A DNA stretch of 64,000 nucleotides, taken from the IMG/VR virus record IMGVR_UViG_3300006931_000029, positions 1 to 64,000 of that record. The stretch is one strand, 5' to 3'. Each line of letters opens with the position of its first letter. Positions within the stretch are counted from its first letter, which is position 1. A program made the position numbers and the translations under genes. Below, in pieces: positions 52,566 through 63,563 of this stretch. Under the pieces are notes generated by a model. That model was not told the origin of the DNA. It worked only from the letters and a program-made list of their open reading frames with translations, and ran no database searches.

Positions 52566-54047
52566 TTACTCAGCCTTCTCGGATCGCTCCGGAAGGGTGA
52601 ACTCAACCTTCTCGATGGTGTGAACCATCGCGTCCTTGTCCTGTTCCAGGAGCGACATCATCTTGAACAGCTTGTCTCCGGCGAAACCAGCGATCGCAGC
52701 CACGCGGTCCTCCGGGAAGGCCATCGTGCCCTGACCGTTTAAGTCGAAGCTGTAGACGAACGGCTTCACGCCGAACTTGCGCGTGTAAGCCGACATTGCC
52801 GAGTTGGCGTTACCTGCTCCCATGCCGCCGACCCACGTCTGCATGTCCGAGAGGATCAGCACGCGCGAGTACTTGCGGTTCATTGCCTGGATTGCTGCTG
52901 GCATGTTCGTGCCACCACCGCTGAACTGGAACCCGCGAGACAGTGACATGGTCGAGTCCTTTCGGTTGTAGTTCACGTAGTGGGCAGAGTCGTCGAAACG
53001 GATCAGGTCCGCATCCCACGCCTTGCAGATAACAGCCGCAAAAATCGATGCGATCTGAGACGGCTTGCCGGCCATCGAACCAGAAACGTCGAGGAACACG
53101 ACAGAGTCGCCCTCTAGCTTCGGAACGTTGCCGCAGGACAGGTCGATTGCGTCGTCCAGCGCACCCATAACCTTTCGGGTAGCAGATGCGTTGAGACCGC
53201 CAACGACCTCGTATGCGGTGTGAATCTGGAACGGGAACACGAGGCTCTTGTGGATGGCGTCCGCGTTGCGAAGCTGGTCGCACACGGCATCGATCAACTC
53301 GCTGTCAGCACCCGCGAGGATGTTGCGCAGATTGCGAATCAATGCCAGATAGCCGAGCTTCTTCTCGCGAATCAGCGCGGCCCATGCGGCGGCCTTCAAC
53401 TCCGCCTTGTTCTCGTCGCTCTCAGCGGCTTGACCGGCCTGCGTGAGCTTGGTCTCCCACGTGTCGGCCGGCTGGAGCTTGCCAGTCATCAACAGCTTCA
53501 ACGCCGGAGTCTCCTTCGGGCGAAGCAAGTTGACTGCGTCGATCAGCTTGAACGGCTGGCCGTCTCGGCGATACTTTGCCAGAGCGTAGGCGTCATAGCG
53601 CTGTAGCGCCGCGCCGAGACCCTTCTTCAGGGAGTTCGGAATCGGCTTGCCGTAGGTCGCCATGTAATACGCGAGAATCTCCACCGGGTCGTCGGCACGA
53701 CGAGAAACACGGTTGAAGAAGTCCTTCGTCCATGCCTCACCCTTGACAGTCTTCGCGATCTCGCCGGCCACGATGTGGCTGATCGAGCGCATGCCGAACT
53801 CGTTACGAGCGAAGACGGCGGCCTTTGCCGCGAAGAGCGGGTCGACCTTCTGGAGGAGTTCCTTGACCCGCACGATTGTGCCGGACTCGGAACGATAAAA
53901 TTGATCCTGAACAAAAGTCGTCAGCAAAATGCTGACAAACTCGAGCTTTGAGGACTGGGAATATCCCGGTCCACCTGCTGCGTTGGTGACAACGGTCCTG
54001 CCTGGGACCTTGCGTGCCACCTTCGCGGATGATGCGAACTTAGCCAT
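52566..54047 (-). CDS. rsr: Ro60/TROVE-domain RNA-binding protein (TROVE + vWA)
   Basis: N.AGG..Y, FY, AR.EFGMR, Y.LAKY, TWE..L, ALIRNLRN, S.V.PF, DVSGSM, GGT, SDMQ; AAGGA RBS. Confidence 0.92.
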   Translation of the reverse strand: MAKFASSAKVARKVPGRTVVTNAAGGPGYSQSSKLEFVSILLTTFVQDQFYRSESGTIVRVKELLQKVDPLFAAKAAVFARNEFGMRSISHIVAGEIAKTVKGEAWTKDFFNRVSRRADDPVEILAYYMATYGKPIPNSLKKGLGAALQRYDAYALAKYRRDGQPFKLIDAVNLLRPKETPALKLLMTGKLQPADTWETKLTQAGQAAESDENKAELKAAAWAALIREKKLGYLALIRNLRNILAGADSELIDAVCDQLRNADAIHKSLVFPFQIHTAYEVVGGLNASATRKVMGALDDAIDLSCGNVPKLEGDSVVFLDVSGSMAGKPSQIASIFAAVICKAWDADLIRFDDSAHYVNYNRKDSTMSLSRGFQFSGGGTNMPAAIQAMNRKYSRVLILSDMQTWVGGMGAGNANSAMSAYTRKFGVKPFVYSFDLNGQGTMAFPEDRVAAIAGFAGDKLFKMMSLLEQDKDAMVHTIEKVEFTLPERSEKAE

Positions 54048-54199
54048 GGTGTTTTTCCTTTGTTTGACTGCCACGCGGAATGCGTGGAGAATAGTTGACG
54101 CTACGGACGTTTTTGAAATTGTAAACAAAAATTTGGCGCTCGAAATGCGTTACAGGCTTCGCAATCCGATTACGGTGCCACACGCCAAACATTGCAAGA

Positions 54200-54441: not shown

Positions 54442-54447
54442 AACAAG

Positions 54448-54804
54448 ATGATTTCTAGCCAAAGAAAAATTGTCAAAGAAAAGTTGATATTTCATCGCGG
54501 TCATAGATGCGAAGGTTGCCAGGGCACTCAATGGCGAGGAAAACCAATCCCTTTGGAACTTCATCATGAGACTGACAGTGACGAAGAAAAGGACCTTCAG
54601 CTTCTGTGTCCTAACTGTCACGCTCAAACCCCGAACTATCGAGGGCGAAACAAGAAAGCTGGAAAGATTTGGAGCAATCTCTGCTCGTGCGGTAATCGAA
54701 AACACGTGTGTTCCCCGAGTTGCAGAAGTTGTGGCGCGAAAAGAAGATGGAATGGTGCCCTTGGAGGGAGTTGCACCCTCACGACATGCGTCACTAAGGT
54801 TTAA
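54448..54804 (+). CDS. HNH (homing-type) endonuclease, antisense within the tRNA array
   Basis: CEGC, LELHH, LLCPNCHAQT. Confidence 0.75.
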   Translation: MISSQRKIVKEKLIFHRGHRCEGCQGTQWRGKPIPLELHHETDSDEEKDLQLLCPNCHAQTPNYRGRNKKAGKIWSNLCSCGNRKHVCSPSCRSCGAKRRWNGALGGSCTLTTCVTKV

Positions 54805-54836
54805 GCAAAGCGCGTCTCCTTTTCCGCCACAAGGGC
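54753..54836 (-). tRNA. tRNA-Leu(UAA)
   Basis: Long variable arm, CCA. Confidence 0.85.
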
Positions 54837-54840
54837 AAGT

Positions 54841-54926
54841 TGGTGCCGGCGACAGGAATCGCACCTGCATGGCCCGAAGACCGCTGGATTTTGAGTTCAG
54901 TGTGTATCCTATTCCACCACGCCGGC
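54841..54926 (-). tRNA. tRNA-Leu(CAA)
   Basis: Long variable arm, CCA. Confidence 0.9.
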
Positions 54927-54931
54927 AAAAT

Positions 54932-55008
54932 TGGTGCCCTCGGCGGGACTCGAACCCGCAACCTCGAGGTTAGAAAGCTCTTGCTCTAGTCCATTGAGCT
55001 ACGAGGAC
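54932..55008 (-). tRNA. tRNA-Arg(UCU)
   Basis: Canonical GG D-loop and UUC T-loop. Confidence 0.9.
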
Positions 55009-55013
55009 AAAAT

Positions 55014-55090
55014 TGGCGCCTCAGACAGGACTCGCACCTGCAACCTGCAGTTTAGGAAACCGCCGCTCTATCTAGTTGAGCTACTGAGAC
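55014..55090 (-). tRNA. tRNA-Arg(CCU)
   Basis: Cloverleaf, CCA. Confidence 0.9.
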
Positions 55091-55094
55091 AAAT

Positions 55095-55180
55095 TGGTGC
55101 CCGCGACAGGAATCGCACCTGCATGGTTTTTCAACCACTAATTTCTAAGACTAGCGTGTCTACTGTTCCACCACGCGGGC
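55095..55180 (-). tRNA. tRNA-Leu(UAG)
   Basis: Long variable arm, CCA. Confidence 0.9.
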
Positions 55181-55185
55181 AAAGA

Positions 55186-55248
55186 TGGAGGGAGCGTCCG
55201 TGCTCGGCACCCTGAGCGCTCAGCCACAACCTCAAGCTGTGGACTCCC
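55186..55248 (-). ncRNA. 63-nt CCA-ended mini-cloverleaf
   Basis: GGGAG.../...CUCCC-U-CCA closing three hairpins; no D/T consensus. Confidence 0.5.
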
Positions 55249-55259
55249 ATTTTCAAAAT

Positions 55260-55333
55260 TGGCTCCCGACCAAGGATTCGCACCTTGGCAAAACGAGTCA
55301 GAGTCGTTTGTGCTACTGTTACACCAGTCGGGA
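55260..55333 (-). tRNA. tRNA-Gln(CUG)
   Basis: U1-A72, G73, CCA. Confidence 0.9.
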
Positions 55334-55334
55334 A

Positions 55335-55429
55335 TGGCGGAGGTGAGCAGGTTCGCACTGCGCCGAGCTTTACCCCGGGCCATGTTTAGCAAACATGTGG
55401 GACTCCTAGTTGTCCACCTTTCTACCTCC
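55335..55429 (-). tRNA. tRNA-Ser(GCU), atypical 8/4 fold
   Basis: 8-bp acceptor with bulged A, 4-bp T stem, long variable arm, G73. Confidence 0.8.
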
Positions 55430-55433
55430 AAAA

Positions 55434-55508
55434 TGGTGCCCGCACCGGGAATCGCACCCGGCTCTCCGCCTTGAGAGGGCGGCGAACTAACTGATATTCG
55501 ATGCGGGC
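55434..55508 (-). tRNA. tRNA-Glu(CUC)
   Basis: Cloverleaf, CCA. Confidence 0.88.
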
Positions 55509-55513
55509 AAAAA

Positions 55514-55598
55514 TGGTCGGCATGACAGGAATCGCACCTGCACGGATTTTATCCAACGCCTTCTGAGGACGCCGTGTCTACTGTTCCACCACATGCCG
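55514..55598 (-). tRNA. tRNA-Leu(CAG)
   Basis: Long variable arm, CCA. Confidence 0.9.
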
Positions 55599-55603
55599 AA
55601 AAA

Positions 55604-55679
55604 TGGTCCTCGCTGTAGGATTCGCACCCACAACTTCCTCCGTGTGAAAGAGGCACTCTAACTGTTGAGTTAAGCGAGG
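55604..55679 (-). tRNA. tRNA-Val(CAC)
   Basis: Cloverleaf, CCA. Confidence 0.9.
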
Positions 55680-55683
55680 AAAA

Positions 55684-55878
55684 TTATTCGACGGCTTCGC
55701 AGATGTCGCGAATGAGGGCAAAGTATGCGATGCATTCACCACCTAGTTTCGTCCCTGGAAGAGCATACTGTCCTGAGCATTGGCGCTCGAGGATAGTCCC
55801 CTTTGGGTAAGCAATGCCGACCTTCAAGTCTAGGTAGTCTTCAGTCAGTTGGACCGTTGCTGGTTTTTGAGTCATCAC
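55684..55878 (-). CDS. Small hypothetical protein inside the tRNA array
   Basis: Fills the gap between RNA genes, same strand. Confidence 0.5.
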   Translation of the reverse strand: MMTQKPATVQLTEDYLDLKVGIAYPKGTILERQCSGQYALPGTKLGGECIAYFALIRDICEAVE

Positions 55879-55892
55879 TTTTAGAATAAATC

Positions 55893-55974
55893 GTGCAGAA
55901 AGCGAAGGGCTGTTCGTTGGTTAGTCGCCGTTGAACAGGTAGCATCGTTGGACCCGGACTAACGGGTTCTGCAC
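55893..55974 (-). ncRNA. Three-way-junction RNA with potential kissing loops
   Basis: 8-bp terminal stem; loops carry GUUAGUC and GACUAAC. Confidence 0.55.
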
Positions 55975-55978
55975 AAAG

Positions 55979-56071
55979 TGGCGGAGAGGTGCAGGTTCGC
56001 ACTGCGCACGATTAAACGTGTCCGAGTTTTCGAGGCTCGTGGGACTCCTGATTGTCCTCCTTACTCTCTCC
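55979..56071 (-). tRNA. tRNA-Ser(CGA), atypical 8/4 fold
   Basis: Same architecture as Ser(GCU). Confidence 0.8.
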
Positions 56072-56072
56072 G

Positions 56073-56162
56073 TGGCGGAAGGTAAAGGAGTTGCACCCTA
56101 GCCGGTTTCCCGACTGATCCGCTTTCCAAGCGGTCCCCACTCTACAGCAGGTCCTACCTTCC
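56073..56162 (-). tRNA. tRNA-Ser(GGA)
   Basis: Long variable arm, G73, irregular D arm. Confidence 0.78.
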
Positions 56163-56166
56163 AAAG

Positions 56167-56244
56167 TGGTGCACGCGGAGGGATTTGAACCCCCAACCCT
56201 TCGTTCCGAAGACGAATGCTCTGGTCCAATTGAGCTACGCGTGC
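56167..56244 (-). tRNA. tRNA-Arg(UCG)
   Basis: Canonical elbow, CCA. Confidence 0.9.
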
Positions 56245-56245
56245 A

Positions 56246-56333
56246 TGGCGGAAGGTGTAGGATTCAAACCCACGGCCGGTTTCCCGACTCCGAGGTTCAA
56301 GCTCGGTGCAATAATTCGCTCTGCCAACCTTCC
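56246..56333 (-). tRNA. tRNA-Ser(UGA)
   Basis: Long variable arm; UUUGAAU T-loop with GA in the D-loop. Confidence 0.88.
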
Positions 56334-56340
56334 AAGTTTT

Positions 56341-56546
56341 CGAACCAGTGTAGCCTGGATTCTGTTTTATCCGCACATTTCTCTAAGCCGCTACCACGAC
56401 GTTTGAACGGGAAGCACTACCCTGACGTCTTAATTTGCGTTGCACCTACCGAGGTCCGCGAGCGTTAACTCTCCCTCGTGCTGCTTTGGTGTCCTAGCTT
56501 CCTCAGGCCGATACACTTTCTCGACCCGCGTGCAGTCCTGTATTCG
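56341..56546 (-). ncRNA. rnpB: Minimal RNase P RNA-like gene
   Basis: Ordered motifs GAGGAAGCUAGGAC, GCAACGCAAAU, UAGAGAAAUG, AAACAGAAUCCAGGCUA; the ends pair as P1. Confidence 0.72.
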
Positions 56547-56961
56547 AAGATGGTTCTTGCGCCAATTTGATGCTAAAAACATCAAAAATGCTGCCGATTG
56601 ATTCAGGCGAAAAGTCTGACGGTTTTCGAATCATGACGGCAAAATCGATCTTGCGCACGGCATCTATCAATTTTTCGTCAATATATCCGGACACAATGCT
56701 GACCGGAGTCATTATTTTGTTGGCTCTCATTTCCCGAAAAACGTCTAAGCCGCTACCATCTGGTAGCTTCATGTCCAACAGCACCACGTGAAACTCTCGC
56801 TGCGCCAGTTGATTGATCGCTTCCTGGCACGTCTTAGCCCAGAACACGTGGCATCTGTAACTCTTTGAGGCGTTAATCAACAACTCCGCCAGTAGCTCAT
56901 CGTCCTCAACGAGAAGCACGTCTTTTATGAGATTCTTAGCGTATTCCGCAAGAGTTTTCAT
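56503..56961 (-). CDS. Single-domain response regulator (REC/CheY-like)
   Basis: VLLVEDD, LLDMKLPDGSG, VSG, KP. Confidence 0.88.
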   Translation of the reverse strand: MKTLAEYAKNLIKDVLLVEDDELLAELLINASKSYRCHVFWAKTCQEAINQLAQREFHVVLLDMKLPDGSGLDVFREMRANKIMTPVSIVSGYIDEKLIDAVRKIDFAVMIRKPSDFSPESIGSIFDVFSIKLAQEPSSNTGLHAGRESVSA

Positions 56962-57006
56962 TAAAACAAATATAGACCATGGAACGACGAACCGTTCCCT
57001 GAGAAG

Positions 57007-57080
57007 TGGCACCCGCGCAAGGATTCGCACCTTGGCAAAGTGAGTCAAAGTCACTTGTGCTACTGTTACACCACACGGGT
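57007..57080 (-). tRNA. tRNA-Gln(UUG)
   Basis: Cloverleaf, CCA. Confidence 0.9.
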
Positions 57081-57275
57081 AAAAACCCCGTCGACGGTCC
57101 GCGATCCATCTGGCAGGCAGGCGCATTACGACTCAGCGACGATCAATCGCCTACCGTGACTCGGTCGACTACGAATCTGCGTCCCCTGAACGGAGACAAA
57201 AGCTTTGCCGGCGGCGATCGCATCCGCAGCTTGGGTTCCTCGAGCTCGCCCAAGACTTGCTACTCATCGGCAAAA

Positions 57276-57351
57276 TGGTCCTCGCGGCAGGATTCGCACC
57301 TGCGACCTCTTCCATGTCAAGGAAGCGCGCTAACTGCTGTGCTACGCGAGG
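57276..57351 (-). tRNA. tRNA-Val(GAC)
   Basis: Cloverleaf, CCA. Confidence 0.9.
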
Positions 57352-57352
57352 A

Positions 57353-57429
57353 TGGCTCCGGCAGAAGGGTTCGCACCTTCATCTTCTCGGTTAACAGCCG
57401 AGCGCTCTACTAAGTTGAGCTACACCGAA
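57353..57429 (-). tRNA. tRNA-Asn(GUU), copy with A18/G55 elbow
   Basis: Cloverleaf, G73, CCA. Confidence 0.88.
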
Positions 57430-57435
57430 ACAAAA

Positions 57436-57512
57436 TGGTCCTCTCAGCCGGAGTCGCACCGACAACCTCGTCCTTCGCAGAGACGCGCTCTATCTAGTTG
57501 AGCTATGAGAGG
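57436..57512 (-). tRNA. tRNA-Arg(GCG)
   Basis: Loop CU-GCG-AA. Confidence 0.88.
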
Positions 57513-57516
57513 AAAT

Positions 57517-57593
57517 TGGGGCGGCTAACGGGATTCGCACCCGCGGTCCTCTGATTCACAATCAGATGCTTTTACTGCTAAGCTATAGCCGCC
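57517..57593 (-). tRNA. tRNA-His(GUG)
   Basis: Encoded G-1 and C73. Confidence 0.9.
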
Positions 57594-57599
57594 ATAAAT

Positions 57600-57684
57600 T
57601 GGTGCGGATAGGGAGAATCGCACTCCCATGGCTGTCAACCGTTACGTTCTCAACGTAGTGTGTCTACTGTTCCACCATATCCGC
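57600..57684 (-). tRNA. tRNA-Leu(GAG)
   Basis: Long variable arm, CCA. Confidence 0.9.
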
Positions 57685-57854
57685 AAGAGCTGGGATTTGC
57701 ACCCTTTACCGCCTCGCTCAGGCGTCTTGTCCGACGATGACTTTTGCTACTCGCAACCATCGTCATTATTTTAGGTTGCTTTGGCGCACCACCGACTGAT
57801 CCTTCGAGAGCTGACGACAGCATTAAGGACCCTCTATGAACAAAATGAACAAAA

Positions 57855-57930
57855 TGGAGCCTAAGAAGGGATTTGCACCCATGACCCACGCTTTACGAAA
57901 GCGTTGCTCTACTAACTGAGCTACTTAGGC
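57855..57930 (-). tRNA. tRNA-Thr(CGU)
   Basis: Cloverleaf, CCA. Confidence 0.9.
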
Positions 57931-57934
57931 AAAG

Positions 57935-58159
57935 TTAAGCTTCACCGCCTCGAGGCGGTGCGGGACGCTTGATCCCAAAGGTTAGGTTCTCGAATGCCCT
58001 ACAGTCGTTCGAGTCAATGGACTTGAACCTGCCGTCATCTAGCTGAACCAAGAAAATTGGATTGTGGTCGATGCCGTAATCGATCATCAGGATTGCGCGT
58101 CCAGGACCGAGAGGTGTCTGCACCCATATCGGCGCTGAGAACTCGTGGGTAATGGTCAT
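57935..58159 (-). CDS. Small conserved phage protein inside the tRNA array
   Basis: 74 aa, TPLG.G.A...IDYG..HN. Confidence 0.6.
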   Translation of the reverse strand: MTITHEFSAPIWVQTPLGPGRAILMIDYGIDHNPIFLVQLDDGRFKSIDSNDCRAFENLTFGIKRPAPPRGGEA

Positions 58160-58179
58160 TCCACTACCAGAACGCAAAA

Positions 58180-58255
58180 TGGAGCTGAACATGGGACTTG
58201 CACCCATCATCACCTGCTTACCAAGCAGGGTCCGCGCTATCTCGGAGTGATCAGC
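58180..58255 (-). tRNA. tRNA-Thr(GGU)
   Basis: Cloverleaf, CCA, atypical D arm. Confidence 0.85.
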
Positions 58256-58257
58256 AA

Positions 58258-58344
58258 TGGTCCGCCTGGAAGGACTTGCACCTACGTAGACCCGAAGGTC
58301 AATGCGTTTACAGCGCATCGCAATTGCTACTCTGCCACAGGCGG
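58258..58344 (-). tRNA. tRNA-Tyr(GUA) with C1-G72
   Basis: Long variable arm, A73. Confidence 0.9.
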
Positions 58345-58349
58345 ATAAA

Positions 58350-58425
58350 TGGAAGCACCGACGGGATTTGCACCCGTGACCTTGGGCTTATGAGTCCCGC
58401 GCTCTACTAACTGAGCTACAGTGCC
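58350..58425 (-). tRNA. tRNA-Met(CAU), elongator-like
   Basis: GGC acceptor start, CU-CAU-AA. Confidence 0.82.
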
Positions 58426-58433
58426 ACTGAGAA

Positions 58434-58523
58434 TGGTGGAACGGGAGGGACTTGCACCCCCGACGGTGGGTTCACCACATGGGCTTAAAAGGCCCGACCA
58501 ATCGCTGCTATGGGGACCGTTCC
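58434..58523 (-). tRNA. tRNA with Lys anticodon (UUU) and a long variable arm
   Basis: CU-UUU-AA loop; GUGG/CCAC variable stem. Confidence 0.8.
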
Positions 58524-58529
58524 AAAAGT

Positions 58530-58604
58530 TGGCTGGGAAGGTTGGGATCGAACCAACGACCATCGAGTTAACAGCTCGCCGCTCTGCCACTGAGCTACAT
58601 CCCA
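58530..58604 (-). tRNA. tRNA-Asn(GUU), canonical-elbow copy
   Basis: GG D-loop, UUC T-loop. Confidence 0.9.
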
Positions 58605-58612
58605 ATGAAAAA

Positions 58613-58798
58613 TTTGCCTTGGCGTGGACCTTCAGCAGTGACCGCAGTCCAACCTCGCTTTTCCCGCTGAGCTTTCTGTTTCGACCGAAGTCTTCCGCCG
58701 CGATGTCTCGAACGACCAGGCCGGTATTAGCGACCCGAAGCGGTATGAACAACCTAGCGCGCCACACTTGAGTCTCCCTCGTAGAGCTCCAAGGCAAA
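58613..58798 (-). ncRNA. ~186-nt structured RNA of unknown family
   Basis: 10-bp terminal pairing UUUGCCUUGG/CCAAGGCAAA, UUCG-capped hairpins, fills the tRNA gap. Confidence 0.55.
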
Positions 58799-58799
58799 A

Positions 58800-58875
58800 T
58801 GGCGGGAATGAAGGGATTCGCACCCTCGGTCTCTTGCGTGACAGGCAAGCGCTTTAACTGCTAAGCTACACCCCC
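58800..58875 (-). tRNA. tRNA-Asp(GUC)
   Basis: G73, CCA. Confidence 0.9.
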
Positions 58876-58882
58876 GTGAAAA

Positions 58883-58990
58883 TGGTTGAGGCCCAGCTTG
58901 TCGTCTGCGCTATGCCCAGCTGGAATCGAACCGAGTCTAGTTAGGGACTTGCACCCCGCTTCGCGACAAGATCGCACCGCACGATCCTCA
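58883..58990 (-). ncRNA. CCA-ended RNA with two T-loop hairpins
   Basis: UGAGG/CCUCA-ACCA, CUUGUCG/CGACAAG, GGG-UGCAAGU-CCC and GG-UUCGAUU-CC. Confidence 0.6.
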
Positions 58991-58994
58991 AAAA

Positions 58995-59071
58995 TGGTCC
59001 GGACGACAGGATTCGCACCTGCGGCCTCTTGATCCCAAATCAAGCGTTCTACTAGGCTGAACTACATCCGG
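58995..59071 (-). tRNA. tRNA-Pro(UGG)
   Basis: C1-G72, A73. Confidence 0.9.
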
Positions 59072-59077
59072 ATAAAT

Positions 59078-59187
59078 TGTGCCGAAGACGTTTCTGCATT
59101 TGTAAGCCACTTGGTTCCCTGCGGGAATTGCTGGTAACAGGGAGACGGTTTCGAACCCGTGTCTTCATGACCCCCATCGCTGACACA
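59078..59187 (-). ncRNA. Circularly permuted tRNA-like RNA on a terminal stem
   Basis: UGUGUC/GGCACA ends, GAAGAC/GUCUUC, T arm first, then UCCCUG..ACCA..CAGGGA. Confidence 0.5.
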
Positions 59188-59191
59188 AAAG

Positions 59192-59270
59192 TGGGAGCAG
59201 GAGTTGGATTTGAACCAACGATTTCGACCTTATGAGGATCGCGAGGACGGCCATGCTCCTCTACCCTGCC
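59192..59270 (-). tRNA. tRNA(CAU), initiator-like body
   Basis: A11-U24 D stem, UUCAAAU; lacks the three G-C anticodon-stem pairs. Confidence 0.75.
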
Positions 59271-59421
59271 ACAAAAAGATTATTGACACGACTCGCACGG
59301 ACCATCGTCTAAGTTGCAAGTTTTTGGCTTCTCGCCTTCAGGCGCAGGAGCATCTTGCACGAACTCGCCGATGTCGTCATCGGGAGACAGAGTCGACGGT
59401 TTTGGATCAGTCATGCGCTAT

Positions 59422-59598
59422 CTACAAGTTCAATCCGTGCAGAACTCCGATTTTGTCCAGCGCATAAACCACGAAGATCAGAGCCAAGATAGCACCGATG
59501 ATTTTCAACGGCGTACCTTGAGCGAACTGACCAGCTACCCAGAAGATCAGGTAGAGCACGAGACCGACTATGAGGATGACGATTAGTGATTCGATCAT
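59422..59598 (-). CDS. 58-aa two-helix membrane protein
   Basis: Two hydrophobic segments; GAGGAGG upstream. Confidence 0.7.
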   Translation of the reverse strand: MIESLIVILIVGLVLYLIFWVAGQFAQGTPLKIIGAILALIFVVYALDKIGVLHGLNL

Positions 59599-59634
59599 GG
59601 TAAACAGACATAGTCTGCCCCTCCTCGTTCCAAA

Positions 59635-59710
59635 TGGTGGGAACAGCTGGAGTTGCACCAGCGACACGCAGATTTTCAGTCTGCTGCTCTACTGACTGAG
59701 CTATGTCCCC
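59635..59710 (-). tRNA. tRNA-Phe(GAA)
   Basis: Cloverleaf, CCA. Confidence 0.92.
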
Positions 59711-59714
59711 AAAG

Positions 59715-59847
59715 TGGTGGGAAGTGCAGGATTCGAACCTACTTGCTTGGCTTTTCAGGGCTTTGCTTTTCCGAAGTAACCCAGTCGGTCACTGCGATCT
59801 TGCGACCGAGAATTAGGTGACTAGGTGTTGTCTTGTTAAGACTTCCC
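59715..59847 (-). ncRNA. tRNA body with Y-like module replacing the anticodon arm (chimera 1)
   Basis: GGGAAGU/ACUUCCC-ACCA, T arm, internal ..UUCUC-GGUC-GCAA-GAUC-GCAGUGA-N9-UUACUUC. Confidence 0.72.
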
Positions 59848-59851
59848 AAAG

Positions 59852-59927
59852 TGGCACGGACGGCAGGAATTGCACCTGCGACCTGGAGATTTGGAGTTTC
59901 CCGCTCTACTAATTGAGCTACGTCCGT
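59852..59927 (-). tRNA. tRNA-Trp(CCA)
   Basis: A1-U72, G73. Confidence 0.9.
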
Positions 59928-59928
59928 A

Positions 59929-60004
59929 TGGAGAGGGATGTCGGAATTGCACCGACGCATGACGCTTTTGCAGAACGTTGCCTTTCTGACTTGGCTAATC
60001 CCTC
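59929..60004 (-). tRNA. tRNA-Cys(GCA)
   Basis: U73, CCA. Confidence 0.88.
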
Positions 60005-60008
60005 AAAG

Positions 60009-60083
60009 TGGTGGAAGCAGTGGGACTTGCACCCACAACCCTTCGCTTAAGAGGCGAGAGCTCTACTATTGAGCTATACTTCC
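60009..60083 (-). tRNA. tRNA-Lys(CUU)
   Basis: Cloverleaf, CCA. Confidence 0.9.
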
Positions 60084-60088
60084 AAAAA

Positions 60089-60218
60089 TGGTGCGCGCGC
60101 CTGGATTCGAACCAAGTCTAATCTTTTCGTAGAAGAAGTAACCCAATCGGTCACTGCGTCTTGCGACGAGAATAAGGTGACTGAGATATTTGTTGTGCTA
60201 CCATTACACTACACGCGC
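60089..60218 (-). ncRNA. tRNA body with Y-like module in the anticodon arm (chimera 2)
   Basis: Intact acceptor, D and T arms plus CCA; permuted module closed by a GCAA loop. Confidence 0.75.
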
Positions 60219-60225
60219 AAAAGCT

Positions 60226-60360
60226 TTCCGAGAGAAAAACGAGGACGGTAGAAGACGCGGTGTTAAGTCGCGTTGCCCAACCATTAGGCGTATTCTCCAG
60301 TTTTGGCGGAGGATATTGGATTTGAACCAATGAAGTAACCGTTTCTCTCACTACTCGGAA
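60226..60360 (-). ncRNA. YrlA-like RNA with a permuted tRNA domain
   Basis: UUCCGAG/CUCGGAA ends, UAGUGA..UUACUUC, then T arm, acceptor 3' strand + GCCA, spacer, acceptor 5' strand, D arm. Confidence 0.72.
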
Positions 60361-60362
60361 AA

Positions 60363-60490
60363 TGGTGGACTGCACGAGATTCGAACTCGGACGCTCGCCC
60401 CCGTAGGGCCGCGAGCGGTTCTACCTGCCGTGGCGGACGGATTGATTACCGTCGGACTTGATTCGTCGTTACGCGTTGGCGATACAGCCC
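60363..60490 (-). ncRNA. 128-nt tRNA-like RNA with Ala identity and no anticodon arm
   Basis: GGGCUGU/GCAGUCC-ACCA (G3-U70, A73), UUCGAAU T arm. Confidence 0.65.
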
Positions 60491-60494
60491 GAAA

Positions 60495-60572
60495 TGGTCG
60501 GTCTGGCCGGATTCGCACCGGCGATCTTTCCGCCCCGAACGGAACGCGATAACTAGGCTACGCTACAGACCG
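60495..60572 (-). tRNA. tRNA-Pro(CGG)
   Basis: C1-G72, A73. Confidence 0.9.
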
Positions 60573-60576
60573 AAAA

Positions 60577-60652
60577 TGGTCCTCCCGATAGGATTCGCAC
60601 CTACGACCCCACGCTTATCAAGCGCGTGCTCTAACTGCTGAGCTACGAGAGG
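60577..60652 (-). tRNA. tRNA-Ile(GAU)
   Basis: Cloverleaf, CCA. Confidence 0.9.
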
Positions 60653-60656
60653 AAAA

Positions 60657-60792
60657 TGGTGCAGCGTGTAGGATTCGAACCCACGTAAGCGGTTTGGATT
60701 TGAAGTAACTCAATCTTCACTGCGTCTTGCGACGAGAAAAGTCAGACTGAGACTTGTTAGGACCGCTGTCCTGGCCACTAGACGAACGCTGC
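60657..60792 (-). ncRNA. Complete tRNA body with Y-like module inserted in the anticodon loop (chimera 3)
   Basis: Anticodon stem GCGGU/ACCGC intact around the module. Confidence 0.78.
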
Positions 60793-60800
60793 AAATTTTT

Positions 60801-60929
60801 CCGTGAGAACAATGGACTGGGAGGTGAAGACCTTTCGGCCCTCGGGTGGAATTGAACCACCATTGATTCCTTAATAGGGAATTGCTTTACCATTAAGCAA
60901 CGAAGTATCCCATATTCCTCACTGCACGG
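60801..60929 (-). ncRNA. Y-like RNA enclosing an unpermuted D/anticodon/T cloverleaf
   Basis: CCGUG/CACGG ends, CAGUGA..AUACUUC, then D arm, AUUCC-CUAUUAA-GGAAU and T arm. Confidence 0.7.
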
Positions 60930-60939
60930 AAATTGTAAT

Positions 60940-61001
60940 CGGGAGAAAAGAATGTCGACGGGTGTATTTCCCCAAGAAGTATCCGTAGACGTCACTACCC
61001 G
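60940..61001 (-). ncRNA. Minimal Y-like module
   Basis: CGGG-UAGUGA..AUACUUC..UUUUCU-CCCG. Confidence 0.7.
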
Positions 61002-61010
61002 AAAAAGCTC

Positions 61011-61082
61011 TCTGCGAGAATAAAGTGGACTCGGTGTTTTTCGATGTTGATGTTGAAGTAACCGAACCCGTCACTGCGCAGA
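61011..61082 (-). ncRNA. Minimal Y-like module
   Basis: UCUGCG-CAGUGA..UUACUUC..UAUUCU-CGCAGA. Confidence 0.7.
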
Positions 61083-61085
61083 AAT

Positions 61086-61162
61086 TGGTGGACCGGATGG
61101 GAGTTGCACCCACCACACGGTGCTTGCAAAGCACTGTCGCCGCTAACGGTACATGCCGGCCC
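61086..61162 (-). tRNA. tRNA-Ala(UGC)
   Basis: G3-U70, irregular D arm. Confidence 0.85.
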
Positions 61163-61169
61163 AATAAAG

Positions 61170-61247
61170 TGGTGCGTCAAGAGGGAATTGCACCCACGAC
61201 ATCCTCTTTGGAAGAGAGGTGCTCTAAACTAACTGAGCTATTGACGC
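61170..61247 (-). tRNA. tRNA-Gly(UCC), A73
   Basis: GCG acceptor start, CU-UCC-AA. Confidence 0.9.
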
Positions 61248-61251
61248 GAAA

Positions 61252-61311
61252 CGGGAGAAAAGTCGACAAGGTGTTTTTCATACAAAGAAGTAACCCTGTC
61301 ATCACTGCCCG
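61252..61311 (-). ncRNA. Minimal Y-like module
   Basis: CGGG-CAGUGA-UGACAGGG-UUACUUC..ACCUUGUCG-ACUUUUCU-CCCG. Confidence 0.7.
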
Positions 61312-61315
61312 AAGA

Positions 61316-61394
61316 TGGTGCGTGTGGCGGGATTCGCACCCACGAAATCCTCGTTGGCAACGAGGCGCTGTAGACTAGGCTGAGCCACACACGC
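61316..61394 (-). tRNA. tRNA-Gly(GCC), A73
   Basis: Cloverleaf, CCA. Confidence 0.9.
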
Positions 61395-61398
61395 AAAT

Positions 61399-61474
61399 TG
61401 GTGCCCGCGACGAGATTCGCACTCGTGTTCTCGCCTTGAAAGGGCGGCGTCCTGGTCTCCTAGACGACGCGGGC
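61399..61474 (-). tRNA. tRNA-Glu(UUC)
   Basis: Cloverleaf, CCA. Confidence 0.9.
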
Positions 61475-61475
61475 A

Positions 61476-61549
61476 TGGCGCACGAGGATGGAATTGAACC
61501 ACCGACCAACCAGTGGAAACCGGCTGCTCTTTCTCTGAGCTACTCGTGC
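61476..61549 (-). tRNA. tRNA-like gene with 6-nt anticodon loop (undetermined)
   Basis: GCCGG-UUUCCA-CUGGU; other arms intact. Confidence 0.65.
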
Positions 61550-61785
61550 AAAATTGTTCGGGCAGAGGCTGTCAAAGCATTTAACGCATCGCGCACCTCT
61601 GCCCTAGTTTTCTATATTCAAAAGAACGATACACACCTTCGACAACTCTTAGTTGAGTCTATTGGTGACCGTGTTGGCCCCGATAGCTATTCCCATCGTT
61701 TGTCTGGCCTAGATGGGTTGCCAGGAGGGATTTTACCCTCAGAGTTGACCGGCTTGCGCCGGAAAGTTGTTTGAATTCAGATACG

Positions 61786-61817
61786 AAAAAACCCGACCTC
61801 TTGCGAGAGTCGGGCTC
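61786..61817 (-). terminator. Intrinsic terminator (attenuator) upstream of the tRNA array
   Basis: GAGCCCGACUCUC-GCAA-GAGGUCGGG-UUUUUU. Confidence 0.85.
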
Positions 61818-61847
61818 AACTAAACCTAAGGTTCCTTTTCTGGCTAC

Positions 61848-61994
61848 CTAGGCGGTTGAACCCTCCTCGATGGGCAAATTATGCCCTTGGGTCGTCTTCG
61901 CGCTACGGCTTTCATATCCGGCCGACAGCACGACGCCGCAATCCTGGTTAAACCAGGTTTTTGGCTGTATCGATACTGTTGATCTTAAGGACAT
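61848..61994 (-). CDS. 48-aa leader peptide (pan-codon attenuator uORF)
   Basis: MSLRSTVSIQPKTWFNQDCGVVLSAGYESRSAKTTQGHNLPIEEGSTA*; its last codons are complementary to the terminator 5' arm. Confidence 0.7.
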   Translation of the reverse strand: MSLRSTVSIQPKTWFNQDCGVVLSAGYESRSAKTTQGHNLPIEEGSTA

Positions 61995-62123
61995 GGAAAG
62001 TGAAGATTGGTTGGTTGAAAATTTGGTGCGAGCTGATTTATCTACTCGCGTCGTGTGAAACTGGAAGAACTTAGACTCTTAGGACCAAGATTTGGTCCAG
62101 GCTGACAAGGTTAATTTGGAAAT

Positions 62124-62209
62124 TGGTGGCGAAAGAAGGGATCGAACCTCCGACCTGGTCGTCCATTTTTAAGGTGGCCGTCCATGCTCTACCGCTAAGC
62201 TATTTCGCC
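62124..62209 (-). ncRNA. tRNA-like RNA with extended anticodon arm
   Basis: Perfect acceptor, D and T arms plus CCA; ~29-nt anticodon arm. Confidence 0.65.
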
Positions 62210-62212
62210 GAC

Positions 62213-62282
62213 TTTCAAGAGAACACCGAGGAAACAGGAACAATCCAGATTACTACGGCCAAAACCTGGCGTTCTCTTGAAA
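62213..62282 (-). ncRNA. Long-stem RNA (15-bp terminal helix)
   Basis: UUUCAAGAGAACGCC/GGUGUUCUCUUGAAA. Confidence 0.45.
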
Positions 62283-62283
62283 T

Positions 62284-62357
62284 TGGAGCCGACCGGGGAT
62301 TAAGAAACACCCCTCTTCCGTCCCATGGGACGGCGTGCGCGGTTACACTATGACGGC
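62284..62357 (-). ncRNA. Degenerate tRNA-like RNA with collapsed anticodon loop
   Basis: CCGUCCC-AU-GGGACGG, 11-nt T-loop, CCA. Confidence 0.55.
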
Positions 62358-62363
62358 ATAAAG

Positions 62364-62469
62364 TGGTGCCAAGGCCGACATCGCTGCCGGCGGCGAAACC
62401 CTGCCCGCTGCATTAGTCGCGTCCGAAGACACGTCGAGAGCAGTGGCGTTTGATTCCACGGGGCTTGGC
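62364..62469 (-). ncRNA. 106-nt CCA-ended tRNA-like RNA with a long central arm
   Basis: GCCAAG/CUUGGC-ACCA; central helix capped by CUUCGG. Confidence 0.55.
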
Positions 62470-62475
62470 ATAAAT

Positions 62476-62830
62476 TGGTGGAGATGGCGGGAGTTGAACC
62501 CGCGTGCTAAAAGAGAACCGAATCTGAGTCTACGCGCGTGTCCTATTTTAATGTCCAGGCGGACCTATCTTTGGCTGAGTTTTTGAGTTCCGCCTCAGCC
62601 GGCAGCGAAATCAGTAGCGTAGTTTTTACGCAGCACGATCTACCCCGCTCATCTTAATCGTGCCACGCGCAGCCTAATTAGGCCGCGAGACGGAGCTCGT
62701 TGGAACGAGCGAACGCCTTGACAATGGTGTTGCCATTTGTGGTTTGCCAAGTCTTGTTATGGAGGTCGACCTAGCAGTCTCCAGCGCGCATCAGGTATCT
62801 GTCTCCTAAAGTAGAATCCAGAACATCCCC
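62476..62830 (-). ncRNA. ssrA: tmRNA, tag (A)GNTIVKAFARSNELRLAA
   Basis: GGGGAUG/CAUCUCC-ACCA with G3-U70, GGAUUC 5' motif, T arm, tag ORF 62678..62734 ending LAA-TAA. Confidence 0.93.
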
Positions 62831-62883
62831 AGTGCTATGTCAAAAGAACTTATCGACGACCGAAGTCACCGACAACGTCGCAG

Positions 62884-62914
62884 AGTTTACTGCTCAATGA
62901 GTCAATGTAAACAA
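62884..62914 (-). promoter_or_regulatory. Sigma70-like early promoter heading the RNA island
   Basis: TTGTTTAC-N17-TAAACT; the same motif recurs at other operon starts. Confidence 0.6.
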
Positions 62915-62927
62915 AAAAGATGCGTTC

Positions 62928-63563
62928 TCACGCATTTTGTTCAACTGGCCGAACGCCGTGAATTCCCTGCTTCAGGACATACCAGTAGAGTTTTCCTTCG
63001 AGTCGAATCTGGTTGGCGCGGCTCTTGTCGACGTAAATTTTGTCGCCGATCTTGATTTGGGCGAGCACCGGGTCTTCGCTCGATGGCAGAAGATTTCCGA
63101 TTTGCACGACCTCAAACTCTGGAGGTGGAATGGCCGAATCCGGCAGATAGAGACCGCCGATCATGTCGATCTTGATGTCACGAACGAGCACCCAGTCGCC
63201 GAGCACATGAAAATTTTCAAGCGTGATCTGCGGAGAATCCAGCTTCGCGAATGCGTCTCCTTGATGCATGATCATCACGGGCTGACGACGGTCACCTTCA
63301 CCGACAAAATGGGTCACGCCCATTTCGAACATCTTGTTGCATTGGTAGATGACGATGTCGCCGACCTTGACGGCAATTTCGACCGTGTCTCCGATGGACG
63401 CAACTCGGCCAAGCCGATGGACTTGGTTGGCATTGGAGGGCATCAGGATGATGCCAGTCGCTTCTTCCTGCACAGCGGTGAGAGCGACTCGGTGTTTGAC
63501 TGGACGCACGCAGCTTCTCAGGTCAATCTCTGCGGGTTTGAAAGGGACGACGTTGGAACTCAT
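62928..63563 (-). CDS. Tandem GroES-like co-chaperonin
   Basis: Two repeats: RP..HRV..GIILMP..V.SIG..VKVGD and LGDWVLV..GGLYLP..VVQIG..IKIGD. Confidence 0.8.
   Translation of the reverse strand: MSSNVVPFKPAEIDLRSCVRPVKHRVALTAVQEEATGIILMPSNANQVHRLGRVASIGDTVEIAVKVGDIVIYQCNKMFEMGVTHFVGEGDRRQPVMIMHQGDAFAKLDSPQITLENFHVLGDWVLVRDIKIDMIGGLYLPDSAIPPPEFEVVQIGNLLPSSEDPVLAQIKIGDKIYVDKSRANQIRLEGKLYWYVLKQGIHGVRPVEQNA

What the first reader, a model, noticed from the sequence alone, without database searches (positions are those of the whole stretch)
60226..60360. YrlA-like RNA that preserves a tRNA-tRNA junction (internal CCA plus spacer)
Seen: inside the Y stem the order is T arm, AUCCUCC-GCCA, spacer AAACU, GGAGAAU, D arm, hairpin. 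This is the 3' half of one tRNA gene, an array-like spacer and the 5' half of the next. Inference: a snapshot of how permuted YrlA RNAs could arise from tandem chimera-type genes. The internal CCA may be cut by RNase P/Z to give a two-piece RNA.
Basis: partly seen in the sequence, partly recalled or inferred. Interest (0 to 1): 0.6.

Follow-up and report, generated by a model that had tools for sequence, protein, structure and literature searches.

The report
Phage Y RNA with built-in CCA
A jumbo phage encodes, inside its tRNA gene array and upstream of its Ro60-like gene, a Y RNA shaped like a circularly permuted tRNA; the loop closing its acceptor-like stem carries a conserved, genome-encoded CCA, which most likely marks it for cutting into a two-piece RNA and is probably not a fossil of two fused tRNA genes.

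Summary
On the minus strand, 60362..60219 reads: terminal stem, T arm, acceptor 3' strand, G-CCA, AAACU, acceptor 5' strand, D arm, hairpin, terminal stem. A covariance model built only from other phages scores it at 57.8 bits. The same model scores the published mycobacteriophage ET08 YrlA at 58.3 bits. The window is part of a 225-kb phage, and its TROVE/Ro60 gene follows the tRNA array on the same strand. So this is a YrlA-type Y RNA.

Among 86 distinct acceptor loops of the family, CCA sits exactly at tRNA positions 74-76 in 12, and at most once at any other offset (P about 1e-9). Two close relatives keep the loop letter for letter while the surrounding stems changed by compensatory substitutions. 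The CCA therefore looks functional.

The "snapshot of origin from tandem genes" idea is not supported:
- A more distant syntenic orthologue has a GAAA-capped stem instead.
- CCA-type loops also occur in phages whose tRNA genes encode no CCA.
- The spacer is unlike this array's junctions.
- Neither half has a tRNA paralogue in the window.

RNase P cleavage into two pieces has a precedent in M. smegmatis YrlA. It is inferred here, not shown. New variant of a known kind.

The parts
60219..60362 (-). Whole predicted Y RNA ('B'). It is bounded upstream by the CCA of the preceding tRNA-like gene (CCA at 60365-60363) and downstream by the G+1 of the next CCA-ended gene (60218).
60348..60358 (-). 5' strand of the terminal (Ro60/Rsr-binding type) stem: stem 1 (CCGAG) plus the family motif UAGUGA.
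   Evidence: Motif found 8 times in the window against 0.01 expected. Nearly invariant in the 33 homologues of alignment A2. Stem 1 shows a compensatory change in L267.
60332..60347 (-). Stem-2 5' strand and the UUACUUC motif. UUAC matches the YUAY element of YrlA RNAs.
   Evidence: PMC4201824
60315..60331 (-). T arm: 5-bp stem and loop UUCAAAU.
   Evidence: Compensatory changes in L267 and L146.
60308..60314 (-). Acceptor-like stem, 3' strand (AUCCUCC).
   Evidence: The 7-bp helix is supported by compensatory changes at all 7 pairs in 98 homologues. C-G changes to U-A in L267.
60304..60307 (-). Encoded discriminator G73 and CCA.
   Evidence: 12 of 86 loops; P about 1e-9; invariant in L266 and L267.
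60299..60303 (-). 5-nt linker AAACU. RNase P cleavage is predicted at its 3' side, between 60299 and 60298.
   Evidence: Position inferred from tRNA rules and from the M. smegmatis precedent (PMC4201824). Sequence invariant in L266 and L267.
60292..60298 (-). Acceptor-like stem, 5' strand (GGAGAAU).
60275..60291 (-). AC dinucleotide (in place of the usual UA) and the D arm with a GG-containing loop.
60255..60273 (-). Anticodon-arm-like hairpin: 5 bp with a 9-nt loop whose core is CUUAACA. It is absent from canonical YrlA but kept, with changed stems, in L266, L267 and L146.
60224..60248 (-). 3' strand of the terminal stem, including the family U-tract (UUUUUCU) and stem 1 (CUCGG).
52566..54128 (-). 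Rsr (Ro60 orthologue; TROVE plus VWA domains), the expected protein partner. It is on the same strand, directly after the tRNA array.

Best explanation
The element is a genuine phage YrlA-type Y RNA.

Its 5' and 3' ends pair into a long bulged stem that carries the motif pair shared by 8 paralogues in this array and by about 100 phage homologues. That stem is presumed to be the docking site for the phage's own Ro60/Rsr protein. Between the strands lies a circularly permuted tRNA body: T arm, 7-bp acceptor-like stem, D arm and an anticodon-arm-like hairpin.

The loop closing the acceptor-like stem encodes G73-CCA and a 5-nt A-rich linker. This is a maintained, functional feature and not debris.

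The most likely mechanism has three steps:
1. The RNA is released from the polycistronic array transcript by maturation of its CCA-ended neighbours.
2. Host RNase P recognises the T arm, acceptor stack and CCA, and cuts 5' of G+1 (between 60299 and 60298).
3. Exonucleases trim AAACU back to CCA.

The resulting pieces of about 59 nt and about 80 nt would stay together through the terminal stem and the acceptor stem. The product would be a Ro60-bound tRNA mimic with a free CCA end. That is the same overall shape as the neighbouring 'chimera-type' genes (tRNA ends with a capped Y hairpin) and as processed M. smegmatis YrlA.

Shown here: the anatomy, family membership, Rsr linkage, non-random CCA placement, and conservation in relatives.
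Inferred: Rsr binding, RNase P cleavage, trimming, and any downstream role such as tethering PNPase or another tRNA-binding factor.
For: - Family membership. Model R1, built from 33 homologues in other phages, scores the element 57.8 bits over its full length as the best hit in the window. It scores the published ET08 YrlA, 160 nt upstream of Ro-like gp220, at 58.3 bits.
- Structure. On 98 distinct homologues, 97.3% of cells are paired against 41-51% in slid controls. The covariation score is 0.85 against 0.09-0.18.
- Rsr linkage. A TROVE+VWA ORF lies on the same strand after the array. 54 of 73 homologue loci carry an Rsr homologue, almost all on the same strand.
- CCA placement is not random. 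It falls at offset 1 in 12 of 86 loops and at other offsets 0 or 1 times, binomial P about 1e-9. Linkers are A/U-rich, whereas many CCA-less loops are GNRA or UNCG caps.
- Conservation. The orthologues in L266 and L267 are 87.5% and 83% identical, the loop is invariant, and compensatory changes occur in the acceptor stem, T stem, stem 1 and the hairpin.
- Stability of the two pieces. Cofold energy is -43.3 kcal/mol against -7.1 and -19.8 for the pieces alone.
- Precedent. M. smegmatis YrlA has a 7-bp acceptor stem, is cut by RNase P in vivo and by M1 RNA in vitro, and its 5' piece ends in CCA (PMC4201824; bioRxiv 10.1101/312249).
- Phage context. Phage Ro60 binds phage Y-like RNAs and forms a complex with host PNPase (PMC12135203).
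Against:
- The acceptor stem has one A.C mismatch.
- Positions 8-9 are AC, not the UA conserved in YrlA and tRNA. This could weaken the tRNA-like core.
- The literal published motif GNCGAAN0-1G is absent.
- The element lies 6.1 kb from rsr, beyond the 4-kb rule used by Chen et al.
- The invariance of a 9-nt loop at 83-88% overall identity is not significant on its own.
- Most family members have 7-bp stems without CCA, so CCA is not required for the family's basic function.
Confidence: 0.6

Rival explanations
1. The CCA and spacer are a passive relic of a junction between two tandem tRNA-type ('chimera-type') genes, so the element is a snapshot of how permuted YrlA RNAs are born.
For: - The order acceptor 3' strand, N73, CCA, short linker, acceptor 5' strand is exactly that of a junction in a CCA-encoding array.
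- Chimera-type genes with the same Y motif lie in the same array; one sits immediately downstream at 60218-60092.
- A chimera followed by the next tRNA scores as a pseudo-YrlA with model R1. This shows that such a path is geometrically possible.
- The dimeric-tRNA origin model is published (bioRxiv 10.1101/312249, citing Sim and Wolin 2018).
- CCA at the exact position recurs in 8 contigs.
Against: - The element and its loop are conserved in two related phages with compensatory stem changes.
- The syntenic orthologue L146 has a GAAA-capped stem, and L146 also has the downstream chimera. Both architectures therefore predate the split.
- The other short-V subtype members found outside this phage clade lack CCA.
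- CCA-type loops occur where the phage's tRNA genes lack CCA: L173 1/24, L154 1/20, L139 2/12.
- The linker AAACU is unlike the NUUU junctions of this array.
- Neither half has a tRNA paralogue in the window.
- The T loop is UUC, whereas 29 of 36 array tRNAs have UGC.
Confidence: 0.15
2. The RNA stays in one piece. The CCA-containing 9-nt loop is a closed loop, either selected for another reason (for example a protein contact or a decoy for CCA-recognising enzymes) or lineage-specific drift.
For: - Most YrlA RNAs are thought to keep a closed acceptor loop (bioRxiv 10.1101/312249).
- S. Typhimurium YrlA and D. radiodurans Yrn1 are not cut (PMC4201824).
- The nearest outgroup differs from CCA by a single base at position 75 (CGA against CCA) and has a sealed loop.
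- The A.C mismatch and AC at positions 8-9 may make it a poorer RNase P substrate.
Against: - Pure drift does not explain CCA at exactly positions 74-76 in 12 of 86 loops and almost never at other offsets.
- CCA-type loops are longer and A/U-rich, unlike the tetraloop caps of the others.
- The 7-bp stem is the feature that Chen et al. link to RNase P cleavage (PMC4201824).
Confidence: 0.2
3. An artefact: two neighbouring partial or whole tRNA genes read as one YrlA. This is the 'dimeric tRNA' false positive that Chen et al. warn about.
For: - The element lies in a dense tRNA array.
- Model R1 does give such pseudo-hits for a chimera plus the next tRNA.
Against: - The two acceptor strands pair with each other (6 of 7), and the outer strands form a 19-bp terminal stem.
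- There is no acceptor 5' strand or D arm upstream of the T arm, and no T arm after the hairpin. Neither half is a gene on its own.
- Pseudo-hits show unpaired acceptor columns and no 3' strand motif.
Confidence: 0.03
4. A circularly permuted tRNA gene whose transcript is ligated at the terminal stem and opened at the acceptor to give a working (class-II-like) tRNA, as in Cyanidioschyzon merolae.
For: - All four tRNA arms are present in permuted order.
- The terminal stem occupies the variable-arm position.
- The hairpin loop core CUUAACA could be read as an anticodon loop.
- The possibility is raised for YrlA in bioRxiv 10.1101/312249.
Against: - The loop is 9 nt, not 7.
- The linkers around the terminal stem are 6-7 nt.
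- The phage has no RtcB ligase.
- The terminal stem carries the Ro60-type motif shared with stand-alone Y RNAs.
- The loop core is not constant in L267.
Confidence: 0.02

Closest known systems
YrlA RNAs (Y RNA-like A) of bacteria and mycobacteriophages (Chen et al. 2014, PMC4201824; structure in bioRxiv 10.1101/312249)
   Same: - Encoded on the same strand as, and close to, an Ro60/Rsr gene.
- The ends form a long stem.
- A YUAY element follows the stem.
- The interior is a permuted tRNA body in the order T arm, acceptor-like stem-loop, D arm.
- The same covariance model hits this element and ET08 YrlA with equal scores.
   Different: - There is no V hairpin before the T arm. An anticodon-arm-like hairpin follows the D arm instead, so the terminal stem sits at the variable-arm position and not at the anticodon-stem position.
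- The stem motif is G(C/U)AGUGA, not the literal GNCGAAN0-1G.
- AC replaces UA at positions 8-9.
- The acceptor loop encodes N73-CCA.
- It is embedded in a tRNA array 6.1 kb from rsr.
Processed, two-piece YrlA of Mycobacterium smegmatis (PMC4201824)
   Same: - A 7-bp acceptor-like stem.
- The predicted RNase P site is at the 5' strand of that stem.
- The 5' piece is expected to end in CCA, with both pieces held by Rsr and base pairing.
   Different: In M. smegmatis the CA is added after cleavage and nibbling. Here the whole CCA is in the genome. Cleavage is shown there and only inferred here.
Two-piece (circularly permuted) tmRNA genes of alpha-proteobacteria and cyanobacteria (Rfam RF04321; knowledge of the family)
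   Same: The gene order is the acceptor 3' strand with encoded CCA, then an intervening segment, then the acceptor 5' strand. The precursor is cut into two base-paired pieces that expose a CCA end.
   Different: A different RNA family and function. There was no significant match: RF04321 gave only E of 2 or more in neighbouring tRNAs.
Circularly permuted tRNA genes of Cyanidioschyzon merolae, and dimeric tRNA precursors
   Same: The 3' half lies upstream of the 5' half, with the acceptor closed by a short linker. The dimeric-tRNA model predicts such an ancestor for YrlA.
   Different: No evidence for ligation into a working tRNA, and no tRNA paralogues of the halves in the window. The terminal stem is a Y-RNA module.

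Membership tests
YrlA-type Y RNA | Encoded near an Ro60/Rsr (TROVE) gene on the same strand (Chen et al. used 4 kb or less) | tested here: met
   The TROVE+VWA ORF 54128..52566 is on the same strand. The distance is 6.1 kb, over the 4-kb rule, but the element lies in one continuous RNA-gene array that ends just upstream of rsr. 54 of 73 homologue loci carry Rsr.
YrlA-type Y RNA | Sequence and structure similarity to accepted members | tested here: met
   Model R1, which contains no window sequence, scores the element 57.8 bits and the published ET08 YrlA next to Ro-like gp220 58.3 bits.
YrlA-type Y RNA | T-arm-like and D-arm-like stem-loops with tRNA consensus nucleotides, T before D | tested here: met
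   GGUUCAAAUCC T arm and a GG-containing D loop. The helices covary in the family.
YrlA-type Y RNA | [quoted passage not shown] | tested here: met
   6 of 7 pairs here. All 7 pairs show compensatory changes in 98 homologues.
YrlA-type Y RNA | 5' strand motif GNCGAAN0-1G in the terminal stem (putative Ro60 site) | tested here: not met
   A regular-expression search finds no literal match. The homologous place holds the phage-family motif G(C/U)AGUGA; ET08 has GCCGAGAG there. The motif looks loose, so this does not exclude membership.
YrlA-type Y RNA | YUAY after the terminal stem | tested here: met
   UUAC at 60338-60335.
YrlA-type Y RNA | UA dinucleotide joining the acceptor-like stem and the D arm (tRNA U8, A9) | tested here: not met
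   AC at 60291-60290, also AC in L146, L145, L266 and L267. This is a subtype trait.
YrlA-type Y RNA | Bound by Rsr in vivo | not testable with these tools
   Needs immunoprecipitation.
Relic of a tRNA-tRNA gene junction | N73-CCA directly after a 7-nt acceptor 3' strand, then a short spacer, then an acceptor 5' strand | tested here: met
Relic of a tRNA-tRNA gene junction | Spacer like the array's own junctions | tested here: not met
   Array junctions are CCA plus (A/C/U)UUU, and the short ones span 1-7 nt. The spacer here is AAACU, so only the length fits.
Relic of a tRNA-tRNA gene junction | Halves traceable to resident tRNA genes | tested here: not met
   Only a 15-nt T-loop match. The T loop is UUC, against UGC in 29 of 36 resident tRNAs.
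Relic of a tRNA-tRNA gene junction | CCA-type loops found only where the phage's tRNA genes encode CCA | tested here: not met
   L173, L154 and L139 have CCA-type YrlA RNAs but CCA-less tRNA genes. Mann-Whitney P = 0.35.
Two-piece processed YrlA (M. smegmatis type) | 7-bp acceptor-like stem stacked on a T arm | tested here: met
Two-piece processed YrlA (M. smegmatis type) | RNase P cleavage and a CCA 3' end in vivo | not testable with these tools
Circularly permuted tRNA gene giving a working tRNA | 7-nt anticodon loop, and ends that can be ligated | tested here: not met
   9-nt loop. No RtcB in the phage.

The most novel reading that the evidence does not exclude
A sizeable minority of phage YrlA-type RNAs (about one in seven, in 8 of 55 contigs) are 'pre-split' by design. 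A genome-encoded N73-CCA in the acceptor loop directs RNase P to open them. The result is Ro60-bound tRNA mimics with a real CCA end, the same shape this phage also makes directly from its chimera-type genes. Such CCA-ended mimics could be charged, or could act as decoys or adaptors for tRNA-directed host enzymes during infection. The several permutations of one tRNA/Y-RNA chimera in a single array would be living intermediates of the tRNA-to-Y-RNA transition.
Probability: 0.2. Interest if true: 0.8.

Novelty: new variant of a known kind. Interest (0 to 1): 0.55.

Why it matters
Y RNAs and Ro60 are conserved from bacteria to humans, yet the role of the tRNA-like domain of bacterial and phage Y RNAs is unknown.

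Only one processed, CCA-ended YrlA (M. smegmatis) has been described, and it has been treated as an exception. This element and its 11 counterparts show that an encoded CCA at the exact tRNA position recurs in phage Y RNAs and is conserved among relatives. That points to a free CCA end as a selected property in some lineages. It also gives a simple, testable handle: cleavage by RNase P, dependence on the CCA, and possible charging.

The finding also supplies concrete sequences that bear on the published dimeric-tRNA origin model, although they do not prove it. For phage biology, it adds to the picture of jumbo phages carrying Ro60, a family of Y RNAs, a tmRNA and a near-complete tRNA set in one transcription unit.

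Tried and rejected
- Rfam. No YrlA or Y RNA family match at E up to 10 in 60000-60600. There were only tRNA hits and a spurious tRNA-Sec hit spanning two elements.
- Phage nucleotide search (megablast) of 59000-63000: no match.
- Exact 25-nt T-arm/CCA pattern in viral contigs: no match.
- Relatives through Rsr. Contigs L002, L005, L007 and L008 stop before the element, and the 635-kb phage LR745206 has no tRNAs near its Rsr.
- Relatives through the Cpn10-like protein in viral contigs: none. The protein word search then gave L266 and L267.
- M. smegmatis YrlA could not be fetched. Two primer-derived patterns gave no hit and then only chance hits in genome contigs. Membership was tested on phage ET08 instead.
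- Supplementary tables of Chen et al., Sim and Wolin 2018, and the 2020 review are not held.
No reads were laid, so there is no evidence on expression or RNA ends, and I did not try another route.
- Idea that the halves come from resident tRNAs (for example tRNA-Leu UAA): rejected, no paralogue.
- Idea that the phage supplies an RtcB ligase to rejoin the ends: no RtcB found.
- Polarity of CCA gain or loss could not be settled. Only one outgroup lineage (L146, with identical copies in L171 and L176) is alignable across the loop.

Full report
CONTEXT

The window is the first 64 kb of a 224,954-bp phage record with direct terminal repeats. It encodes a T4-type portal among other proteins.

On the minus strand, from 62830 down to 54203, lies one dense RNA-gene array: a tmRNA and 36 ARAGORN tRNAs (37 Rfam tRNA hits). 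All but one of these tRNAs have an encoded CCA. Where neighbouring genes lie close together the spacers are 1-7 nt and U-rich. Directly after the array, on the same strand, is a 520-aa ORF (54128..52566) with TROVE and VWA domains. This is an Ro60/Rsr orthologue.

THE OBSERVATION

Between tRNA-Pro (60572-60495) and tRNA-Lys (60083-60009) there are three unannotated elements. The middle one is the finding. The coordinates, verified base by base, are listed under 'parts'.

The MFE fold reproduces the following (z = -3.1, 0 of 200 shuffles as stable):
- a 19-bp bulged terminal stem
- the T arm
- the acceptor-like stem
- the D arm
- the extra hairpin

The preceding gene ends in CCA at 60365-60363 and the next gene starts at 60218. 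The RNA is therefore probably 60362..60219.

IT BELONGS TO A LARGE FAMILY LINKED TO Rsr

The 5' strand motif AGUGA-N7-11-G(U/A)UACUUC occurs eight times in the window, against 0.01 expected. All eight are on the minus strand between 59773 and 61306, and there are none elsewhere in the genome.

Adding a T-loop to the pattern found 73 stretches in IMG/VR. Most have this layout:
- terminal stem
- V hairpin
- T arm
- 7-nt acceptor 3' strand
- short loop
- 7-nt acceptor 5' strand
- UA
- D arm
- terminal stem

54 of the 73 loci carry an Rsr homologue within the fetched stretch. It is almost always on the same strand, and the RNA usually lies within a few hundred nt upstream.

An alignment of 33 such RNAs, none from the window, gave a consensus with many compensatory pairs in the T arm, the 7-bp acceptor stem and the D arm. 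Covariance model R1 was built from this alignment.
- The element is R1's best hit in the window: 57.8 bits, full length.
- R1 finds the published mycobacteriophage ET08 YrlA with 58.3 bits. That RNA lies 160 nt upstream of the annotated Ro-like gp220.

On 98 distinct homologues, 97.3% of the cells of the model structure are paired, against 41-51% when partners are slid. The covariation score is 0.85 against 0.09-0.18. That alignment is fitted to the model, so these counts lean towards it, but the slid controls share the bias.

The element is therefore a YrlA-type Y RNA.

It belongs to a subtype without the V hairpin. An anticodon-arm-like hairpin follows the D arm instead, which puts the terminal stem at the variable-arm position. 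The subtype also has AC in place of UA at positions 8-9.

THE INTERNAL CCA

I extracted the acceptor loops of the 100 best family members.
- Among 86 distinct loops of 4 nt or more, CCA starts at the second loop position (tRNA 74-76) in 12.
- At each of the other five offsets tested it occurs 0 or 1 times.
- The binomial P is about 1e-9 with the loop composition, and about 1e-8 with p = 1/64.
- The 12 lie in 8 of 55 contigs.
- Their linkers are 1-17 nt and A/U-rich.
- Many CCA-less loops are GNRA or UNCG caps.

IS IT A FOSSIL JUNCTION?

Several tests say probably not.

(i) Conservation. Two close relatives were found through the neighbouring Cpn10-like protein: L266 (a 229-kb contig) and L267. 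Their orthologues are 87.5% and 83% identical to the element. The loop GCCAAAACU is unchanged. The acceptor stem (C-G to U-A), the T stem, stem 1 and the hairpin stem changed by compensatory substitutions. This is a maintained gene.

(ii) A CCA-less orthologue. A more distant relative, L146 (Rsr 55% identical), has the same gene in the same place. It is preceded by a CCA-ended tRNA-like gene and followed by an orthologue of the downstream chimera-type gene. Its homologous loop reads CCGAAAGG, which is two extra pairs capped by GAAA, with no CCA. The other short-V members found outside this clade also lack CCA. The polarity cannot be fixed with one outgroup, but both architectures predate the split of these phages.

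(iii) CCA-less arrays. CCA-type loops also occur in phages whose tRNA genes encode no CCA: L173 1/24, L154 1/20, L139 2/12. There is no association overall (P = 0.35).

(iv) Spacer. In this array and in L266 and L267 the true junctions read CCA followed by (A/C/U)UUU. AAACU does not fit.

(v) No donor genes. Neither half has a paralogue among the resident tRNAs. In addition, 29 of 36 resident tRNAs carry UGC at T-loop positions 54-56, whereas the element has the family-wide UUC.

The general model that YrlA arose from dimeric tRNA transcripts is already in the literature (bioRxiv 10.1101/312249, citing Sim and Wolin 2018). These data neither prove nor exclude it as a deep origin.

MECHANISM

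The best-supported reading is that the encoded CCA plus an unstructured linker make the acceptor-like stem a processing site.

Chen et al. showed the following for M. smegmatis YrlA, the one studied YrlA with a 7-bp stem (PMC4201824):
- It is cut by RNase P in vivo and by M1 RNA in vitro.
- The 5' piece ends in CCA.
- Both pieces stay with Rsr.

Bacterial RNase P is known to use the 3' CCA of its substrates, and an encoded CCA blocks RNase Z (established knowledge). RNase P, not RNase Z, is therefore the expected enzyme. The cut would fall between 60299 and 60298, followed by exonucleolytic trimming of AAACU.

The two pieces are predicted to stay paired: -43.3 kcal/mol against -7.1 and -19.8 apart.

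The product would have the same overall shape as the chimera-type genes of the same array. Those have tRNA ends with CCA and a Y hairpin capped by GCAA at or in the anticodon arm.

Binding to Rsr and any effector role are inferred by analogy. One example is recruitment of PNPase, as shown for Thermus phage phiLo Ro60 and its Y-like RNAs (PMC12135203).

No expression data could be obtained.

VERDICT

- The identification as YrlA-like is right.
- The processing idea is plausible but already has a precedent.
- The 'snapshot of origin' inference is not supported.

What is new is the recurrent, conserved, genome-encoded CCA in phage YrlA acceptor loops, together with the short-V, hairpin-bearing subtype. 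This is a new variant of a known kind and of moderate interest.

Noticed in passing
window 59773-61306, minus strand: Eight paralogous Y-RNA modules lie in 1.6 kb. Their shared motifs are G(C/U)AGUGA ... G(U/A)UACUUC on the 5' strand and a U-tract such as UUUUCUC on the 3' strand. Three are short stand-alone Y hairpins (about 61314-61248, 61083-61011, 61004-60938). Model R1 hits them at 31-34 bits.
   Followed up: partly
window 60793-60657, 60218-60092, 59847-59715, minus strand; L146 4543-4414: 'Chimera-type' genes. They have a tRNA-shaped acceptor stem with encoded CCA and a T arm (two of the three also have a D arm). The Y module forms a hairpin capped by GCAA, placed inside or in place of the anticodon arm. 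The one directly downstream of the finding has an orthologue in the distant relative L146. With model R1 they give 'dimeric' pseudo-hits together with the next tRNA.
   Followed up: partly
window 60936-60790, minus strand (includes ARAGORN 'tRNA-Asn att' 60907-60837): A Y stem encloses a tRNA-like body in the order D arm, anticodon-like arm, T arm, followed by a 7-bp GAAA-capped hairpin. There is no CCA. This is yet another arrangement of the same parts (fold z = -3.4).
   Followed up: no
window 54365-61549, minus strand (the 36 ARAGORN tRNAs): 29 of 36 tRNAs have UGC, not UUC, at T-loop positions 54-56. That puts G where U55 (pseudouridine) is almost universal. The Y-RNA-linked tRNA-like domains keep UUC. 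The same habit is visible in the relative L146.
   Followed up: no
window 60490-60363, minus strand: A 128-nt CCA-ended tRNA-like gene has a paired acceptor stem, a T arm and a large structured insert, including a long GC-rich arm. It has no Y motif, and neither ARAGORN nor Rfam calls it. A counterpart ending in CCA precedes the orthologue in L146.
   Followed up: no
window 55429-55335, 56162-56070, 56069-55980, 58990-58885, 58525-58432, 61165-61087, minus strand: The long 'gaps' of the array hold further uncalled RNAs of 90-110 nt. They have complementary ends followed by NCCA and the usual U-rich spacer, so the array holds many more tRNA-like genes than the 36 that were called.
   Followed up: no
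L177 (1.3 kb), L154, L173, L159, L188: Other phages carry tandem runs of up to seven YrlA-type genes, some with and some without the internal CCA, interleaved with tRNA genes. In such runs the functional register (Y-ended or CCA-ended units) is ambiguous.
   Followed up: no
window 62476-62830, minus strand: A phage-encoded tmRNA (Rfam 95 bits), with a tag peptide ending in ...ELRLAA, heads the same RNA-gene array.
   Followed up: no
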